This document shows, in pieces, positions 8,596 through 51,416 of a stretch of DNA of 64,000 bases (the first letter of the stretch is position 1; every line of letters starts with the position of its first letter). The notes below the pieces were generated by a model. It was not told the DNA's origin and made no database searches. It saw nothing but the letters and a program-made list of their open reading frames with translations. The stretch lies in sequence record MN047793.1; one strand, written 5' to 3'. The translations under genes were made by a program, and so were the position numbers.

Positions 8596-8967
8596 TTATG
8601 CAAGCGGTCTCGAATTCATGCATTGTACAGCAGTCGCAGAAATAACCAAATCAATCACTTGAGTGATGTCGCTAGCCACTCCAATATGGGTTTCCAACGA
8701 CACCACGAACGTACCGCCATCACCCGGAGTCACCACGAAACGATTACCATTCGGCAGCGTATGATAGCTCGGAGAAAGTTTAGCTTCTTGCCGTACACTA
8801 TCGCGATAAGCCTCTACCACGTCTTTTACTTCTTTCAAGCTACGACCATGCAATTCAGCACGAAGTGACTTGATAGCCGGAACCATGTGGTTATTGCGAG
8901 CGTACAGCTTCCATTGAGCACTGCTAGTAAATGAATTGATGATATCAGTGATGTCAGTCGGATTCAT
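8596..8967 (-). CDS. Protein with a ribosomal L7/L12 C-terminal-like motif
   Basis: VPAIKSLRAELHGRSLKEVKDVVE resembles the bL12 CTD pattern AIKxxRxxTGxGLKEAKxxVE. Confidence 0.5.
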   Translation of the reverse strand: MNPTDITDIINSFTSSAQWKLYARNNHMVPAIKSLRAELHGRSLKEVKDVVEAYRDSVRQEAKLSPSYHTLPNGNRFVVTPGDGGTFVVSLETHIGVASDITQVIDLVISATAVQCMNSRPLA

Positions 8968-9029
8968 GATAATGTCCTTGTTAGTTTGTGTGTTAATTAT
9001 AACACTACAAATCGTAATGTCAACACATA

Positions 9030-12358: not shown

Positions 12359-12889
12359 TCAACGTATGCCGTAATCGTATGCGACCAATTTACCCTTGCG
12401 ATTGTAGCCGACTTGTGCACAATCGACATAACCCACCCAATCCGGTAGAACCTCATAAGGCTCATCCGTGGACTTCACTTGTTCCATGAACAGAATTGGA
12501 GTCTTTTCAAAGTAGGCCAGACGGGTTCTAGCATACTGTACGTTATCAGGGTTATAATCCGGTTCGTCTTCCTTTGCGTTGGAAATACTGCCCTCCCAAT
12601 CGTTATCTGCGTGACCATCCCAGCTAATAGGGAATTTGATAACGTATGGCCCCATCAATAGAACGACACGATTGCGACCATTCGTGACGCCTGAAGCACG
12701 CTTAAAATACTGAACGAATTTGCTTGCGACTTTGGGACCACAACACCCTTTAATAAACTCAACACATTTTTTCATAGTCTCCAGCGTATTGGATTCTACG
12801 GAGTACCATTCTCCAGAATCTGCACGGCCTTGCACCATGTAATGTTGAATCGGGAATTTGTATTGGCGACGGCAACCAATCTTGTGCAT
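12359..12889 (-). CDS. Putative protein-kinase-like (APH/STK fold) protein
   Basis: GRNRVVL..YVIKFP, NxWE, ILFMEQV, DCAQVGY..GKLVAYDYG (DFG-like DYG). Confidence 0.55.
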   Translation of the reverse strand: MHKIGCRRQYKFPIQHYMVQGRADSGEWYSVESNTLETMKKCVEFIKGCCGPKVASKFVQYFKRASGVTNGRNRVVLLMGPYVIKFPISWDGHADNDWEGSISNAKEDEPDYNPDNVQYARTRLAYFEKTPILFMEQVKSTDEPYEVLPDWVGYVDCAQVGYNRKGKLVAYDYGIR

Positions 12890-33819: not shown

Positions 33820-33915
33820 GGGGAGTTAGCTCAGTTGGTAGAGCATCGGGCAATAAACCGGCCGGTTTGCTAGAAGTCCCGAGGGTCGATGGTTCGAGAC
33901 CATCACTCCCCACCA
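33820..33915 (+). ncRNA. tRNA-like RNA with a 27-nt anticodon loop
   Basis: GGGGAGT/ACTCCCC-A-CCA, canonical D and T arms, TCGGG/CCCGA stem enclosing 27 nt. Confidence 0.8.
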
Positions 33916-34599: not shown

Positions 34600-34675
<76 letters not shown>

Positions 34676-36884: not shown

Positions 36885-37508
36885 ATGCCTATAGGTAATA
36901 GCAAAGTAATGGTTACCAAGCATGTTATGGAACGGATTCAACAACGCTTCCCTAATTTGTTTGGAAAGTATTTCGGCAACGAAACCATGTTGCGAAATCT
37001 GATCATTGCTCAGGTTTCGACTGGTGAACGCTTAGAAGACTGGAAGCGGGTTCCATTTTATAAAAACAAAATGGATACCGAATATGGTCCAGGCACTGAG
37101 ATTGTTCGTAAGTCTGGTGTCTACTATCTGTGTCAGCTAACCGATAACAGTAAGTACCTTCGGGTGTTGACAGCAGTTCCAGGGACGCTCTATTACCCTA
37201 GAGCTGACTCCATTGCGGTCGGTACGAAGGGTGGAGCTAGATACTTCAATGTGAATGAGTACATTAACCGGTTGCATGGTGAGGCTCTAAAAGAGTATCG
37301 AATCCGTAGCAATGGGGTTAATCCCGCTCAGAAGCATGCTGGACACTCTTCATCGGCGGAATTTGCTCAAGTAAATGCACTAAAGCAGTCACTTAGACAA
37401 AATATCTACAACTCGCGGAAGAAAATGCTAAAGAATCCGCGTGATGTAGTAGGGCGATTGAAGCACGAAGAAAAATCGCCAAATTGCAAAAACAGCTTGA
37501 CGAATTAG
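36885..37508 (+). CDS. Hypothetical protein
   Basis: 207-aa ORF; N-terminal TKHVMERI.QRF resembles RelE-like folds (weak). Confidence 0.6.
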   Translation: MPIGNSKVMVTKHVMERIQQRFPNLFGKYFGNETMLRNLIIAQVSTGERLEDWKRVPFYKNKMDTEYGPGTEIVRKSGVYYLCQLTDNSKYLRVLTAVPGTLYYPRADSIAVGTKGGARYFNVNEYINRLHGEALKEYRIRSNGVNPAQKHAGHSSSAEFAQVNALKQSLRQNIYNSRKKMLKNPRDVVGRLKHEEKSPNCKNSLTN

Positions 37509-37534
37509 AAAAAAGTGGTAAATTATAGATGTAC

Positions 37535-37631
37535 GGGGAGTAAGCACATTGGTTATGGGCATCGACTGAGGAGGGAGTGAAACCTAACTCCGGCGAAGGT
37601 AGTGAGGTTCGATTCCTCATACTCTCCACCA
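37535..37631 (+). ncRNA. tRNA-like RNA with expanded anticodon domain
   Basis: GGGGAGT/ACTCTCC-A-CCA, T arm TGAGG-TTCGATT-CCTCA, internal GGAG/CTCC hairpin; own sigma70 promoter. Confidence 0.7.
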
Positions 37632-37666
37632 ATTAACGATCTTATTTAACACATTAGAGCGTACTA

Positions 37667-37978
37667 ATGAACGAAGTCCTCCAGAAAATGTTCCCCACCG
37701 GTGTCCTTAATGGACATGGTACCGAAGTGAATGGACTGAACGCTGGTGTGATTCCGCAAGGGGTCATCCTGAAACAGGCCCAGAGTAGTTTTGACAAATA
37801 TAACCGCAGGGAATGGTTTCTTGTGGAATCTGATGGATACACAGCATTACTGCGGGTATGCACTGCTAGTAAGGGTGCAGGTTATGATGAATTCGCGGTC
37901 ATTCGCGGTATTGTGCCTAGCAGTGATGCAACGCAAGTGGCTGAATTTCACAGGTTCTTTGAACAACAGACTAGCTAA
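37667..37978 (+). CDS. Hypothetical protein
   Basis: 103-aa ORF. Confidence 0.65.
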   Translation: MNEVLQKMFPTGVLNGHGTEVNGLNAGVIPQGVILKQAQSSFDKYNRREWFLVESDGYTALLRVCTASKGAGYDEFAVIRGIVPSSDATQVAEFHRFFEQQTS

Positions 37979-38081
37979 AAAGTAGTTGACAATTTGAAGA
38001 AACGTGGTAAAGTAGTTACATGAGGTGACGGCATCGAGGCCACTCACCAGTTCTTTTACAATTTGAGCGGTAATGAACGAA

Positions 38082-38348: not shown

Positions 38349-38472
38349 CGGCAGGTAAGCAAGGGGCCAAAGCTGGGCGCTTAAGGTGTAGATACTTGAA
38401 AAGGTATCAGAGATGGTAGAGTCTCCCACAAGCACCTCTAATTCGTAGGTTCGAATCCTACCCTGACGACCA
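38349..38472 (+). ncRNA. 124-nt tRNA-like RNA with a two-hairpin insert in the anticodon arm
   Basis: CGGCAGG/CCTGACG-A-CCA; Tyr-like D arm; T arm GTAGG-TTCGAAT-CCTAC. Confidence 0.7.
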
Positions 38473-38563: not shown

Positions 38564-38669
38564 CTAAAAACGTAGGAATACTGCCCAAAGCCGGTTCCTA
38601 TTGTCTGGAATGCGATAAAAAATTGCCGAGCTAGCGTTTCTAGCCCATGTCCAGACACCCTTTTTAAAT

Positions 38670-38819
38670 ATTTTGGTGGCGAAAGTGGTATACGCGGGGG
38701 CCAAGGCCAATATGATGTGGGGAGCTAAACATTCTCCATGCTGCTCATGGCCGAAAACTGCTGTCTTAGACGTTGCAGCTATACGTGACGACATGTGGGT
38801 TCGACTCCCACCCAAAATA
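38670..38819 (+). ncRNA. 150-nt tRNA-like RNA (Leu-type D arm, ~100-nt insert, no encoded CCA)
   Basis: ATTTTGG/CCAAAAT; TGGCGAAAGTGGTATACGC; GTGGG-TTCGACT-CCCAC. Confidence 0.65.
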
Positions 38820-38894
38820 CTATATAAGTTATACTGTGACTTTCTACGGTAGAGTACTTGGAAACAAGCTCCGAATGTAGACACAGTTGCAATA

Positions 38895-38998
38895 TCAAAA
38901 ATACTCACGTATTTGGCACAGGAAAACCAGACGGAGTAATCGGTCGCTTATTTTCTCGGGTGCGTCCCCAGGATTTAGAGTGGTTAGAGTATTTTTGA
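38895..38998 (+). ncRNA. Stem-closed structured RNA cassette
   Basis: Perfect 12-bp IR TCAAAAATACTC/GAGTATTTTTGA. Confidence 0.5.
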
Positions 38999-39002
38999 AC
39001 AA

Positions 39003-39083
39003 TATGACTGTAGAGGGATTCGTCCCTCAGATGTTGAAATGAAGGACAGGAACACGGGAGTTCGATTCTCCCCAGGTCCACCA
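39003..39083 (+). ncRNA. ssrA: tmRNA acceptor piece (3' part of a permuted ssrA; 5' boundary approximate)
   Basis: GGGAG-TTCGATT-CTCCC T arm, CAGGTCC-A-CCA; pairs with GGGCCTG at 39231 giving G3:U70. Confidence 0.85.
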
Positions 39084-39230
39084 AAAATATATTACCCTAC
39101 CCAAGGGGTTGTCAGCAGGGTTGGAAGGACTGACACATGCAAAAACTATTCAGCCGTTGTAATGGCGTGTTGTTGGGAAGGTTCAAAATCCCGGTATAAA
39201 TGAATAGCGAATCCGTAATGTATTTTTGAT

Positions 39231-39410
39231 GGGCCTGCACTGGTTTCGACTCTTGGAGATAATGGAGATTGACAGTTGGTCACACAAGACTTTAAAATGA
39301 AGACAGAGAAGTCTCTAATCACAAAGAATTAAACGACAACGTTGATTCATTCGATTTCGCCATGGCGGCCTAATCCCAAGCACATCTAGCACTTGGTCAC
39401 CCGACGCTAG
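39231..39410 (+). ncRNA. ssrA: tmRNA coding piece (5' acceptor strand plus tag ORF; 3' boundary approximate)
   Basis: GGGCCTGcaCTGGTTTCGAC start; tag reading frame ...NDNVDSFDFAMAA* at 39332-39373. Confidence 0.88.
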
Positions 39411-40247: not shown

Positions 40248-40884
40248 TTGATGGGTGGTCGGTAGCTCTACAAGGCCCTATTATTACTCCATATCTTTAG
40301 CGAAAGTGCACGCCCGGAATTAACTGGGTCTGCGGTATGCAGAGGGAGATTGATTATTATCTACACATGACCCATCAATTTTTAATTGGATAGAGTGCAG
40401 TTAGCCGGTATCATTGGAAATATCCAAGCATCGCAAAGTGACAATGCCGATGATATCCTGATGCACATAATCCATACTAATACTGATGCGATAAAGTGTA
40501 AGTGGCTACATACAAGGCTCATAACCTTGAGTGCCGGTTCGACTCCGGAATTCGCTACCAAATTGTAAACATCATGCAAAATGTGTAAAAATAGTGATCA
40601 CTGATCGGCTAGTGAAACAGATTAGGATGTTGTTTACAACCAAATACCATCAGGTCAAAAGTTAACGACTAGTATTAACGAGTATGTGTAAGAACATATA
40701 CCTATGGTACCCAAATCAAAGCATGTGATTCATGCCCCGCCACATGGGAAGCGTGGCTCTGCTCTATCATTGCAAACTGTATATGATATGCGTTTTGATG
40801 GTTTCAAGTAAACCATTGGTGCTAAGCCGGTTTTGGGAGTCATTTTCTGCACCCGATAAAGAAAACTCCACATGGTCTGGTATT
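40248..40884 (+). ncRNA. Second block of stem-closed structured RNA cassettes
   Basis: Closing helices 40248-56/40370-78, 40563-70/40632-39, 40643-49/40878-84; T-loop+ACCA end at 40533-40560; no credible ORF. Confidence 0.5.
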
Positions 40885-47562: not shown

Positions 47563-47664
47563 AGTCCTGTTGCTAATGTTGGCCGTAGGGGCACCCTTAT
47601 ACAGTGCTAGAGCAATCTCCAGATAAGAGATGTAACGTGGGTTCGATTCCCACCGGGACTACCA
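47563..47664 (+). tRNA. Atypical tRNA-Ile(TAT)-like RNA with a 29-nt variable region
   Basis: AGTCCTG/CGGGACT-A-CCA; GCACC-CTTATAC-AGTGC; ATCTC/GAGAT extra hairpin. Confidence 0.65.
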
Positions 47665-48471: not shown

Positions 48472-48560
48472 GGCTAGGTGGCGGAGAAGTCGAACGCAGG
48501 GGACTGCAAATCCTCATGGAGAAATCCTCATCACAGGTGCAAATCCTGTTCTGGCCTCCA
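48472..48560 (+). tRNA. tRNA-Cys(GCA) with long variable arm
   Basis: Loop CTGCAAA, U73, 17-nt variable region. Confidence 0.85.
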
Positions 48561-48764: not shown

Positions 48765-48851
48765 GGGTCAGTCGCTCAGCGGCCGAGAGCACGAGACTGT
48801 TAATCTCGCGACGAAAGTCCATCGCTGGTTCGAATCCAGCCTGTCCCTCCA
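48765..48851 (+). tRNA. tRNA-Asn(GTT) with long variable arm
   Basis: Loop CTGTTAA; GAC-GAAA-GTC extra arm; U73. Confidence 0.82.
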
Positions 48852-51340: not shown

Positions 51341-51416
51341 GGGGCCTTAGCTCAGCTGGGAGAGCGTCGCACTTGCACTGCGAAGGTCATCGGTTCGAAC
51401 CCGATAGGCTCCACCA
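51341..51416 (+). tRNA. tRNA-Ala(TGC)
   Basis: G3:U70, loop CTTGCAC. Confidence 0.95.

What the first reader, a model, noticed from the sequence alone, without database searches (positions are those of the whole stretch)
37535..37631. Second GGGGAGT-acceptor tRNA-like RNA with a hairpin-extended anticodon arm
It has the same 5' acceptor strand as the 33820 RNA and an ACCA end. The imperfect TCGAC/GGCGA stem encloses a GGAG/CTCC hairpin with an AGTGAAA loop region instead of a 7-nt loop. It has a dedicated promoter at ~37497. Shared acceptor identity with unrelated inserts suggests a common processing or charging pathway (inference).
Basis: partly seen in the sequence, partly recalled or inferred. 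Interest (0 to 1): 0.7.

Follow-up and report, generated by a model that had tools for sequence, protein, structure and literature searches.

The report
Alanine-type tRNA look-alike without anticodon
A giant Xanthomonas phage carries an unannotated gene for a tRNA-shaped RNA that keeps the parts needed for processing and probably for loading with alanine, but has lost a usable anticodon, so it cannot read codons; it is a lineage-specific oddity whose role is untested.

Summary
The window is Xanthomonas jumbo phage Xoo-sp13. Bases 37535-37631 encode a tRNA-shaped RNA. It has an acceptor helix, a D arm with GG, a perfect T arm (TTCGATT) and an encoded ACCA end. A host-type promoter lies 10 nt upstream. 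ARAGORN at default settings, Rfam at its gathering scores and the GenBank record all miss it.

- The acceptor plus T stack is 13 bp (8/5), not 12.
- The 3' acceptor strand differs from the 33820 RNA at position 70. This RNA has G3:U70 with G2-C71, G4-C69 and A73, the bacterial alanine identity set. The 33820 RNA has G3-C70, so the two do not share a charging identity.
- The promoter also serves the next gene, ORF87.

No 7-nt loop with U33 can be drawn, with or without removing an insert, so the RNA cannot decode. It is not tRNA-Sec (20.9 bits against a cut-off of 47).

It was found only in Xoo-sp13 and near-identical environmental strains. XacN1 and a related contig lack it. It sits where XacN1 has a second amber-suppressor tRNA.

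Best reading: a remodelled tRNA duplicate kept as a non-decoding tRNA mimic that is cut by RNase P and probably charged with alanine. A decaying pseudogene remains a serious rival. The scan has noted similar tRNA-scaffold RNAs in this window before.

The parts
37497..37524 (+). Promoter P1: TTGACG, 16-nt spacer, TG-extended -10 TAAATT. It lies in and just after the 3' end of ORF86. The predicted start is 3-5 nt upstream of the mature 5' end.
   Evidence: 9 of 12 matches, TG present. The phage uses this promoter class heavily: 62 TTGACA-N16-18-TANNNT sites against 2.6 expected. The 33820 RNA has the same 10-nt distance from -10 box to mature end.
37535..37542 (+). Acceptor 5' strand GGGGAGTA. 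It pairs with 37620-37627, and G37537 is G3.
   Evidence: Sequence; ARAGORN relaxed drawing; constrained fold.
37544..37560 (+). D arm: stem GCAC/GGGC with an A.G mismatch, extendable by A-U and U-A. The loop contains GG (G18 G19).
37562..37596 (+). Expanded 'anticodon' arm. Base stem TCGAC/GGCGA (one mismatch), 5' spacer TGAGGAG, distal hairpin GGAGT-GAAACCTA-ACTCC. It has no 7-nt loop with U33.
   Evidence: Enumeration of all hairpins found no stem of 4 bp or more closing a 7-nt loop.
37597..37602 (+). Variable region AGGTAG.
37603..37619 (+). T arm TGAGG-TTCGATT-CCTCA. It is perfect, with the consensus T loop.
37620..37631 (+). Acceptor 3' strand TACTCTCC (T37625 is U70, pairing with G3), discriminator A73 (37628) and encoded CCA (37629-37631).
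   Evidence: The alanine identity set is taken from PMC9976931.
37632..37978 (+). A 35-nt spacer and ORF87 (37667-37978, phrog_5022). They are probably co-transcribed with the RNA from P1. The spacer aligns with the XacN1 spacer, which holds a good promoter that has decayed here.
36885..37508 (+). ORF86, the upstream neighbour whose 3' end carries P1. Its N-domain has a RelE/ParE-superfamily fold. A link to the RNA is possible but not shown.
   Evidence: synteny.

Best explanation
37535-37631 is a real, independently promoted gene for a non-decoding tRNA mimic. It is a heavily remodelled duplicate of a phage tRNA.

Its nearest relative in the genome is the 33820 RNA. By position it replaces the second amber-suppressor copy that XacN1 has in front of the ORF87 homologue.

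Shown by the sequence:
- The half of a tRNA that RNase P, the CCA enzyme and AlaRS read is intact: a 13-bp acceptor/T stack, a consensus T loop, the G18 G19 elbow and an encoded ACCA.
- The D-stem core and the anticodon arm are irregular.
- No anticodon loop exists.

Inferred:
- P1 transcribes the RNA together with ORF87.
- RNase P and 3' trimming release a stable RNA of about 97 nt and leave the ORF87 message.
- Host AlaRS charges the RNA with alanine. The RNA has A73, G2-C71, G3.U70 and G4-C69, and AlaRS ignores the anticodon.
- The RNA does not take part in normal decoding. It has no anticodon loop, and an 8-bp acceptor weakens EF-Tu binding.

What the mature RNA does afterwards is open. 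My ranking is: (i) tRNA-type punctuation and stabilising element for the P1 transcript, with alanylation incidental; (ii) a trans-acting alanyl-tRNA look-alike that occupies or supplies a factor which reads the tRNA acceptor end.
For: - The shell is far beyond chance and lies on the tRNA strand of a 26-tRNA array.
- Promoter geometry is the same as for the 33820 RNA.
- Among the window's tRNA shells that end in NCCA, G3.U70 occurs only in tRNA-Ala and in this RNA. The tmRNA acceptor, read by eye, has it too. The first four acceptor pairs and A73 equal those of the phage tRNA-Ala at 51341.
- The bacterial Ala set is A73, G2-C71, G3.U70, G4-C69 (PMC9976931).
- An 8-bp acceptor lowers EF-Tu affinity about 100-fold in tRNA-Sec (PMC7609411).
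- Compared with the 33820 RNA, three T-stem pairs and one arm pair differ on both sides and still pair.
- The element is present, with no substitution inside it, in low-coverage contigs of three independent environmental runs. Their flanks do vary.
- No homologue was found for the antisense ORFs.
- Positional evidence: the spacer to ORF87 aligns with XacN1's Sup2-ORF088 spacer.
- Amber suppressors are the best match to the distal hairpin and variable region.
Against: - No orthologue exists outside Xoo-sp13-like strains. XacN1 lacks it, and contig L011 lacks both it and ORF87. Scans of IMG/VR, JGI metagenomes and the phage collection gave only chance or generic tRNA hits. There is therefore no covariation test, and the RNA is dispensable for relatives.
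- The D stem and the arm each have an A.G mismatch, and U8 is replaced.
- The arm is not more stable than shuffles and has two registers.
- The minor Ala determinant G20 is absent.
- G3.U70 is not absolutely Ala-specific in this phage group: XacN1 tRNA-Asn has it, next to U4.G69.
- There is no expression or charging data.
- The absence of variants in environmental contigs is not significant at about 2% divergence.
Confidence: 0.55

Rival explanations
1. Decaying tRNA pseudogene. A duplicated tRNA (a suppressor copy or a copy of the 33820 RNA) lost its anticodon loop through indels. It persists only because it lies between a promoter and ORF87, and the G.U at 3:70 is an accident of one C-to-T change.
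For: - It is lineage-specific and lost without replacement in L011; XacN1 lacks it too.
- There are mismatches in the D stem and the arm, U8 is missing, and the arm is thermodynamically ambiguous.
- The Rfam score is below the cut-off.
- One transition separates its acceptor from that of the 33820 RNA.
Against: - Thirteen contiguous acceptor/T pairs, the consensus T loop, GG in the D loop and the encoded CCA are all intact, despite roughly 30-40% divergence from any candidate parent. T-stem differences are compensated on both sides.
- The promoter is well placed.
- Phage genomes shed useless DNA quickly.
- Other anticodon-remodelled tRNA shells in this operon are conserved across three phages.
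Confidence: 0.3
2. Intron-containing pre-tRNA. The hairpin is a short intervening sequence that is cut out by a phage nuclease (for example the RelE-fold ORF86) and sealed by the phage RNA ligases or PNKP, giving a decoding tRNA.
For: - Contig L011 has a tRNA-Lys(UUU) identical to the window's copy except for a precise 30-nt hairpin insertion between positions 34 and 35.
- XacN1-type phages encode PNKP-Hen1 and three Rnl2 ligases (PMC5852040, PMC7824862).
- A nuclease-fold gene lies next door.
Against: - No way of joining the two ends of the 25-nt loop gives a 7-nt loop with U33 (my reading).
- ARAGORN finds an 'intron' solution only at an 80% threshold, and that solution has a mismatched stem.
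- No bulge-helix-bulge motif is present.
- The 8/5 stack would still disfavour EF-Tu.
Confidence: 0.05
3. A selenocysteine-type or allo-tRNA-type special decoder, suggested by the 8/5 stack and a D stem that can be drawn with 6 pairs.
For: - 13-bp acceptor/T stack.
- In the 7.8-kb Rfam scan the only hit reported here was tRNA-Sec.
- The length, 97 nt, is like that of tRNA-Sec.
Against: - tRNA-Sec scores 20.9 bits against a cut-off of 47, and 54 of the other matches in the two phage genomes, ordinary tRNAs, score higher on that model.
- There is no UCA anticodon, no 7-nt loop and no separate long variable arm.
- Allo-tRNAs have 12-bp (8/4 or 9/3) stacks and serine identity (PMC7609411).
Confidence: 0.02
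4. RNA partner of ORF86. The tRNA look-alike is the decoy, inhibitor or substrate of the neighbouring RelE/ParE-fold protein, as in an RNA-antitoxin pair.
For: - In five contigs an ORF86-family gene carries a promoter at its 3' end and is followed 16-37 nt later by a tRNA or tRNA-like gene.
- Four of those five have abnormal anticodon arms.
- RelE-type proteins work in the ribosomal A site, where tRNAs bind (established knowledge).
Against: - All these contigs are related jumbo phages, so shared ancestry explains the gene order.
- In L011, L019 and L027 the family member is followed by a different RNA, and in L025 by no tRNA at all.
- The downstream RNAs are not clearly homologous to one another.
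- No nuclease activity has been shown, and the family's invariant residues (H13, R17, R21) are not the classical RelE ones.
Confidence: 0.08

Closest known systems
tRNA-like domain of tmRNA
   Same: An alanine-type acceptor (G3.U70, A73, CCA), an intact T arm, a degenerate D region and no anticodon. The anticodon stem is replaced by another helix. A two-piece tmRNA with G3.U70 lies 1.4 kb downstream in the same phage.
   Different: There is no mRNA-like part, no pseudoknots and no tag reading frame. ARAGORN's tmRNA search finds nothing here. The stack is 13 bp rather than 12. The phage has no SmpB gene.
Canonical tRNA-Ala, including the phage's own at 51341-51416
   Same: The first four acceptor pairs, A73 and CCA are identical. 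The base of the arm and the variable loop share GCGAAGGT.
   Different: There is no UGC anticodon loop, G20 is absent, an extra acceptor pair is present, and overall similarity is no higher than to other tRNAs.
The 33820-33915 RNA of the same phage and the L024:3295-3393 RNA (tRNA shells with hairpin-extended anticodon arms)
   Same: The same 5' acceptor strand, the same promoter geometry and the same plan: a 5-bp base stem closing spacers plus a distal hairpin. The 33820 RNA is the best pairwise match.
   Different: Pair 3:70 is G.U here, G-C in the 33820 RNA and G.A in L024. The insert sequences are unrelated. The 33820 RNA has a clean 7/5 shell.
Bacterial tRNA-Sec, and allo-tRNA-like irregular tRNAs and pseudogenes from soil metagenomes (PMC7609411)
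   Same: An 8-bp acceptor and 13-bp stack as in tRNA-Sec. Like the irregular allo-tRNA-like sequences it is non-translating, and those were suspected to be linked to mobile or toxin-antitoxin elements.
   Different: It fails the tRNA-Sec model. It has no serine-type long variable arm, and it has Ala rather than Ser determinants.
Phage T4 'species 1 and 2' stable RNAs in the tRNA gene cluster (from my own knowledge; no paper found in the library)
   Same: Small stable RNAs of unknown function, encoded among phage tRNA genes and matured by the tRNA-processing enzymes.
   Different: No sequence relation was tested. This comparison rests on memory only.

Membership tests
Canonical tRNA (Rfam RF00005) | Score at or above the curated cut-off (29 bits) on the covariance model | tested here: not met
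   20.7 bits, with the anticodon arm treated as a 29-nt insertion. It is absent from the gathering-threshold scan.
Canonical tRNA (Rfam RF00005) | 5-bp anticodon stem closing a 7-nt loop with U33 | tested here: not met
   Enumeration of hairpins found none. ARAGORN at default settings finds nothing.
Canonical tRNA (Rfam RF00005) | Acceptor stem, T arm with T-loop consensus, G18 G19, NCCA | tested here: met
   Expected 0.01 per shuffled window.
Alanine acceptor identity (bacterial AlaRS substrates) | G3.U70 with G2-C71, G4-C69 and A73 | tested here: met
   Sequence and shell table. The determinants are as listed in PMC9976931.
Alanine acceptor identity (bacterial AlaRS substrates) | G20 (minor determinant) | tested here: not met
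   In the D loop ATTGGTTAT a U follows G18 G19.
Alanine acceptor identity (bacterial AlaRS substrates) | Actual aminoacylation with alanine | not testable with these tools
   This needs an AlaRS assay or an acid-gel northern blot. The phage has no AlaRS of its own.
tRNA-Sec (RF01852) | Score of 47 bits or more; UCA anticodon; long variable arm; 8/5 stack | tested here: not met
   20.9 bits, lower than most ordinary tRNAs on this model. There is no UCA loop and no separate variable arm. Only the 8/5 stack is met.
tmRNA | tRNA-like domain joined to a tag-coding region with pseudoknots | tested here: not met
   ARAGORN -m finds nothing. No tmRNA family hit overlaps the element.
Intron-containing tRNA | Removing one contiguous insert restores a canonical anticodon stem-loop | tested here: not met
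   No junction of the loop ends gives U33 (reading). ARAGORN with introns allowed finds nothing until the threshold is lowered to 80%.
Repeated or mobile hairpin element | The insert sequence recurs elsewhere in the genome | tested here: not met
   It is unique in the window and in both phage genomes at up to 3 mismatches.

The most novel reading that the evidence does not exclude
The RNA is a functional, alanine-charged, anticodon-less tRNA mimic. It would work with the translation-interference module around it: an amber-suppressor tRNA, the RelE-fold ORF86 and a two-piece tmRNA. It could be the RNA partner of the RelE-fold protein. It could instead be a stand-alone 'tmRNA head' that enters ribosomes whose A site has been emptied by mRNA cleavage.
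Probability: 0.1. Interest if true: 0.8.

Novelty: new variant of a known kind. Interest (0 to 1): 0.45.

Why it matters
If the RNA is made and charged, it would be a natural example of a free alanyl-tRNA look-alike that cannot decode, apart from tmRNA. That would show that phages reuse the acceptor half of a tRNA as a module.

The surrounding data point the same way:
- XacN1's two suppressor tRNAs have identical cores and swapped acceptor stems.
- Several phages carry tRNA shells with replaced anticodon arms.

Practically, it shows that standard tRNA finders and the GenBank record miss a set of structured RNA genes in jumbo-phage tRNA arrays. If it is only a decaying copy, it is still a dated snapshot of how such shells arise.

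Tried and rejected
- Homologue hunts that found nothing useful:
  - IMG/VR pattern scans gave chance hits or unrelated tRNAs.
  - The JGI metagenome pattern scan gave two chance hits with no tRNA features.
  - The phage collection by blastn matched only Xoo-sp13 itself, plus T-arm/acceptor matches to KVP40-type tRNA-Tyr.
  - Protein-anchored locus searches in IMG/VR with ORF86 and ORF87 found nothing.
  - The ORF87 word-based protein search found only itself.
- No whole genome is held for the window.
- tRNA-Sec reading: rejected.
- Intron reading: rejected for this RNA (and my reading of the loop ends).
- Mobile-hairpin reading: rejected.
Only a purine-rich GAGGA...GGAGUG resemblance exists, without the AGUA/GAGA core, so I rejected it.
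- A mini-ORF (GUG after the GGAGG run) running to the CCA end: judged coincidental and not pursued.
- Derivation specifically from tRNA-Ala: not supported by overall similarity.
- Antisense ORFs 37393-37632 and 37654-37863: no family hits.
- Environmental contigs are too close (95-99%) to give covariation.
- No RNA-seq of infected cells was found. The 'RNA' runs listed are metagenomic and probably hold DNA.

Full report
**Identity of the window.**
- The window matches Xanthomonas jumbo phage Xoo-sp13 (MN047793.1) at 99.7% identity, in the same coordinates.
- The closest sequenced relative is XacN1.
- The Xoo-sp13 record annotates no RNA genes in the stretch I fetched (32-41 kb), only hypothetical proteins.
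- ARAGORN finds 26 tRNA genes, all on the + strand between 32.6 and 52.9 kb.
- Rfam adds a permuted tmRNA at 39030-39373.

**Check of the observation.**
- All stated sequence features are present:
  - GGGGAGT at 37535, the same 7 bases that begin the 33820 RNA.
  - ACCA at 37628-37631.
  - TCGAC/GGCGA at 37562-66 and 37592-96, with one A.G mismatch.
  - GGAGT/ACTCC at 37574-78 and 37587-91, closing GAAACCTA.
  - TTGACG-16-TAAATT with TG at 37497-37524.
- ARAGORN at default, with introns allowed, and with its lowered-score option finds nothing. Only at an 80% threshold does it draw a cloverleaf, with an 8-pair acceptor and a forced 19-nt 'intron'.
- The Rfam tRNA model gives 20.7 bits (cut-off 29). 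It aligns the acceptor, D arm and T arm well and skips 29 nt in place of the anticodon arm.
- My shell detector (T loop TTCRANN, 5-bp T stem, 7-bp acceptor, NCCA) finds 24 sites on the + strand. All are tRNAs or tRNA-like RNAs. It finds none on the - strand and 0.01 per shuffled window. The shell is therefore real.
- This is the only hit with an extra nucleotide between T stem and acceptor. That nucleotide pairs with A8 and gives an 8/5, 13-bp stack.

**Anatomy.**
- Acceptor pairs: G1-C72, G2-C71, G3.U70, G4-C69, A5-U68, G6-C67, U7-A66, plus A8-U. The discriminator is A73, followed by CCA.
- D stem GCAC/GGGC has an A.G mismatch and can be extended by two pairs. The D loop holds GG.
- The T arm is perfect.
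- Listing every hairpin in the middle of the molecule gives no stem of 4 bp or more that closes a 7-nt loop.
- No way of joining the two ends of the 25-nt loop puts a U at position 33, so excising an insert does not restore an anticodon loop.
- The arm as a whole is no more stable than shuffled sequence (z -0.67). GGAG occurs twice and offers two registers. The distal hairpin alone is stable (z -3.4).
- The cloverleaf-constrained fold costs 2.8 kcal/mol relative to the free minimum.

**Acceptor identity.**
The 3' strands differ at one base: ACTCTCC here and ACTCCCC there. Pair 3:70 is thus G.U here and G-C there.
- G3.U70 is the major alanine determinant. The bacterial set is A73, G2-C71, G3.U70, G4-C69, with G20 as a minor element. 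Changing G.U to G-C abolishes charging (PMC9976931).
- This RNA has all four acceptor determinants, exactly as the phage's own tRNA-Ala does (GGGGCCT/AGGCTCC-A-CCA). It lacks G20.
- Among the window's tRNA shells that end in NCCA, only tRNA-Ala and this RNA have G3.U70; one other G.U line there lacks CCA and looks like a chance hit. The tmRNA acceptor, read by eye, has it too.
- One exception exists in the relative: XacN1 tRNA-Asn has G3.U70 next to U4.G69.
- The phages encode no AlaRS and no SmpB, so charging would be by the host enzyme.
- An 8-bp acceptor is the feature that lowers EF-Tu affinity for tRNA-Sec about 100-fold (PMC7609411).
- Together with the missing anticodon loop, this makes ribosomal decoding very unlikely.

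**Families considered.**
- tRNA-Sec: 20.9 bits against 47, below 54 of the other matches in the two phage genomes, which are ordinary tRNAs. There is no UCA and no separate variable arm. Rejected.
- tmRNA: nothing from ARAGORN or Rfam at this place.
- Mobile hairpin: the insert is unique in both phage genomes.

**Distribution.**
- XacN1 has no copy. It has tRNA-Sup, tRNA-Sup, ORF088 (the ORF87 homologue), a promoter and then the stable-RNA operon.
- A Logan contig (L011) was found through a 77%-identical ORF86 homologue. There the promoter at the end of ORF86 runs straight into the stable-RNA operon. The promoter is a hybrid: its first half looks like P1 and its last 21 nt are identical to the second promoter at 37986. 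That is what a deletion between the two promoters would leave.
- So the RNA and ORF87 are missing together in L011, and ORF86 and the RNA are missing in XacN1.
- Pattern scans of IMG/VR and JGI metagenomes, and blastn against 50,697 phage records, found no homologue.
- Contigs from three environmental runs, 95-99% identical to the window, cover 37411-37593 and 37602-37842. They show no change inside the RNA, while the flanks vary (insertion at 37470, changes at 37518, 37652, 37679). This shows that the element is not an assembly artefact. At that divergence it is not a significant conservation signal.

**Origin.**
- The best pairwise match among all tRNAs of the window is the 33820 RNA, at 70 of 97 positions against 64 or fewer for the others.
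- Relative to that RNA, three T-stem pairs and one arm pair differ on both sides and still pair. One D-stem pair and one arm pair are broken.
- By position the RNA stands where XacN1 has its second suppressor copy. The spacer down to the ORF87 start aligns. In XacN1 it contains TTGACA-17-TATACT, which in Xoo-sp13 has decayed to TTAACG...TAGAGC. ORF87 therefore now depends on P1 and on read-through of the RNA gene.
- Amber suppressors are also the top matches to the distal hairpin plus variable region: GGAGT..CTA.ACTCC.GG against GGAGC.CT.CTA.AA.ACTCT.AGG (z about 2). This is suggestive only.
- XacN1's two suppressors have identical 58-nt cores but entirely different acceptor stems and discriminators. 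Acceptor exchange on a constant body evidently happens in this phage group.

**Context.**
- Other tRNA shells with altered anticodon arms occur in the window and in relatives:
  - 33820-33915 has a clean shell with a 27-nt loop.
  - 47563-47664.
  - 38349-38472 and 38666-38830, both conserved in XacN1 and L011.
  - XacN1 L002:147-255 has a Phe-type acceptor and a hairpin of about 55 nt.
  - In L011, a tRNA-Lys(UUU) is identical to the window's copy except for a precise 30-nt hairpin between positions 34 and 35.
- XacN1-type phages also invest in tRNA repair, with PNKP-Hen1, a CCA enzyme and three Rnl2 ligases (PMC5852040, PMC7824862).

**The neighbour ORF86.**
- A full HMMER scan gave 41 relatives, mostly about 100 aa, matching residues 4-107. 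Invariant residues are H13, R17, R21, W53, F58 and T96. No Pfam family matches.
- The AlphaFold model has mean pLDDT 85.
- The top 46 PDB matches by Foldseek are all RelE, YoeB, HigB, YafQ, ParE or PrpT/PfiT toxins, with probability 0.57 to 1.0 and TM by target about 0.33-0.53.
- In AlphaFold DB the best match is a DUF4258 protein, with TM by hit 0.63.
- The ESM Atlas gave the same lead.
- Family members sit just after an amber-suppressor tRNA in six of nine contexts.
- In five contigs the family member carries a promoter at its 3' end and is followed within 16-37 nt by a tRNA or tRNA-like gene:
  - this RNA in Xoo-sp13;
  - a tRNA with a 9-nt loop (L020);
  - a 76-nt tRNA-Tyr (L022);
  - a tetraloop-capped shell (L023);
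  - an extended-arm shell without CCA (L024).
- In L011, L019 and L027 a different RNA follows the family member. All these contigs are related phages, so I treat the link as a lead, not a finding.

**Verdict.**
- The gene is real and the RNA cannot decode.
- The parts that are preserved are exactly those read by RNase P, the CCA enzyme and AlaRS. The parts that decoding needs are gone.
- I put 0.55 on a maintained, processed, probably alanylated tRNA mimic that also punctuates the P1-ORF87 transcript. I put 0.30 on a decaying pseudogene and about 0.15 in all on the other rivals; the four rival confidences are given separately and are not scaled to sum with these.
The two RNAs differ at the one acceptor position that decides alanine identity.

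Noticed in passing
window 36885-37508 (ORF86); relatives P0005-P0044; loci L011, L019, L020, L022-L027: ORF86's N-domain belongs to an unnamed family of about 100-aa proteins with a RelE/ParE-superfamily fold (invariant H13, R17, R21, W53, F58, T96). The gene ends in TAG, usually follows an amber-suppressor tRNA, and has a promoter at its 3' end that drives a stable RNA. The cluster of suppressor tRNA, RelE-like protein and tmRNA looks like a module acting on the ribosomal A site.
   Followed up: partly
L002:5912-5987 and L002:5995-6070 (XacN1): The two tandem amber-suppressor tRNAs have identical 58-nt cores but completely different acceptor stems (GGCCCGT/ACGGGCC with A73, and GCTTTCG/CGAAAGC with G73). 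This implies that the same suppressor body is charged with two different amino acids.
   Followed up: no
L011:1-102: A tRNA-Lys(UUU) is identical to window 34600-34675 except for a precise 30-nt hairpin insertion between anticodon positions 34 and 35. It is either a mini-intron or a fresh disruption.
   Followed up: partly
L002:8435-8848 (XacN1 38570-38983): An unannotated GOLLD RNA (227 bits, cut-off 150) lies just upstream of tRNA-Gly in XacN1. No GOLLD hit was found in the Xoo-sp13 window.
   Followed up: no
window 47563-47664 and 40487-40560: Two further tRNA-like genes missed by ARAGORN. One is a 102-nt shell with an irregular interior (Rfam tRNA 35.3 bits). The other is a 74-nt CAT-anticodon tRNA at 27.4 bits.
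   Followed up: no
window 48472-48560 and 48765-48851; XacN1 L002:428-516, 8918-9003, 12434-12524: tRNA-Cys and tRNA-Asn (and, in XacN1, Lys, Gly and Thr) carry long variable arms that these specificities normally lack.
   Followed up: no
L002:7723-7917 (XacN1): A promoter-fronted RNA of about 195 nt is closed by GCCCTTG/CAAGGGC followed by ACCA. Inside it is a tRNA-like D arm and T arm (GGGAGTAAGCTC...GAGAGGTTCGAATCCTCT). No counterpart was found in Xoo-sp13.
   Followed up: no
L016:2480-2568 (XacN1 tRNA-Asn): The acceptor has G3.U70 next to U4.G69, which is unusual for a non-alanine tRNA.
   Followed up: no
window 38349-38472; L023:3324-3403; L024:3295-3393: Three tRNA-like shells have a G.A mismatch at pair 3:70. 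The orthologues of the 38349 RNA in XacN1 and L011 have G-C there.
   Followed up: partly
window 37506-37581: ORF86 stops at TAG, 640 nt downstream of the amber-suppressor tRNA gene. Read-through would add 24 codons that run into the tRNA-like gene, ending at the TGA at 37581.
   Followed up: no
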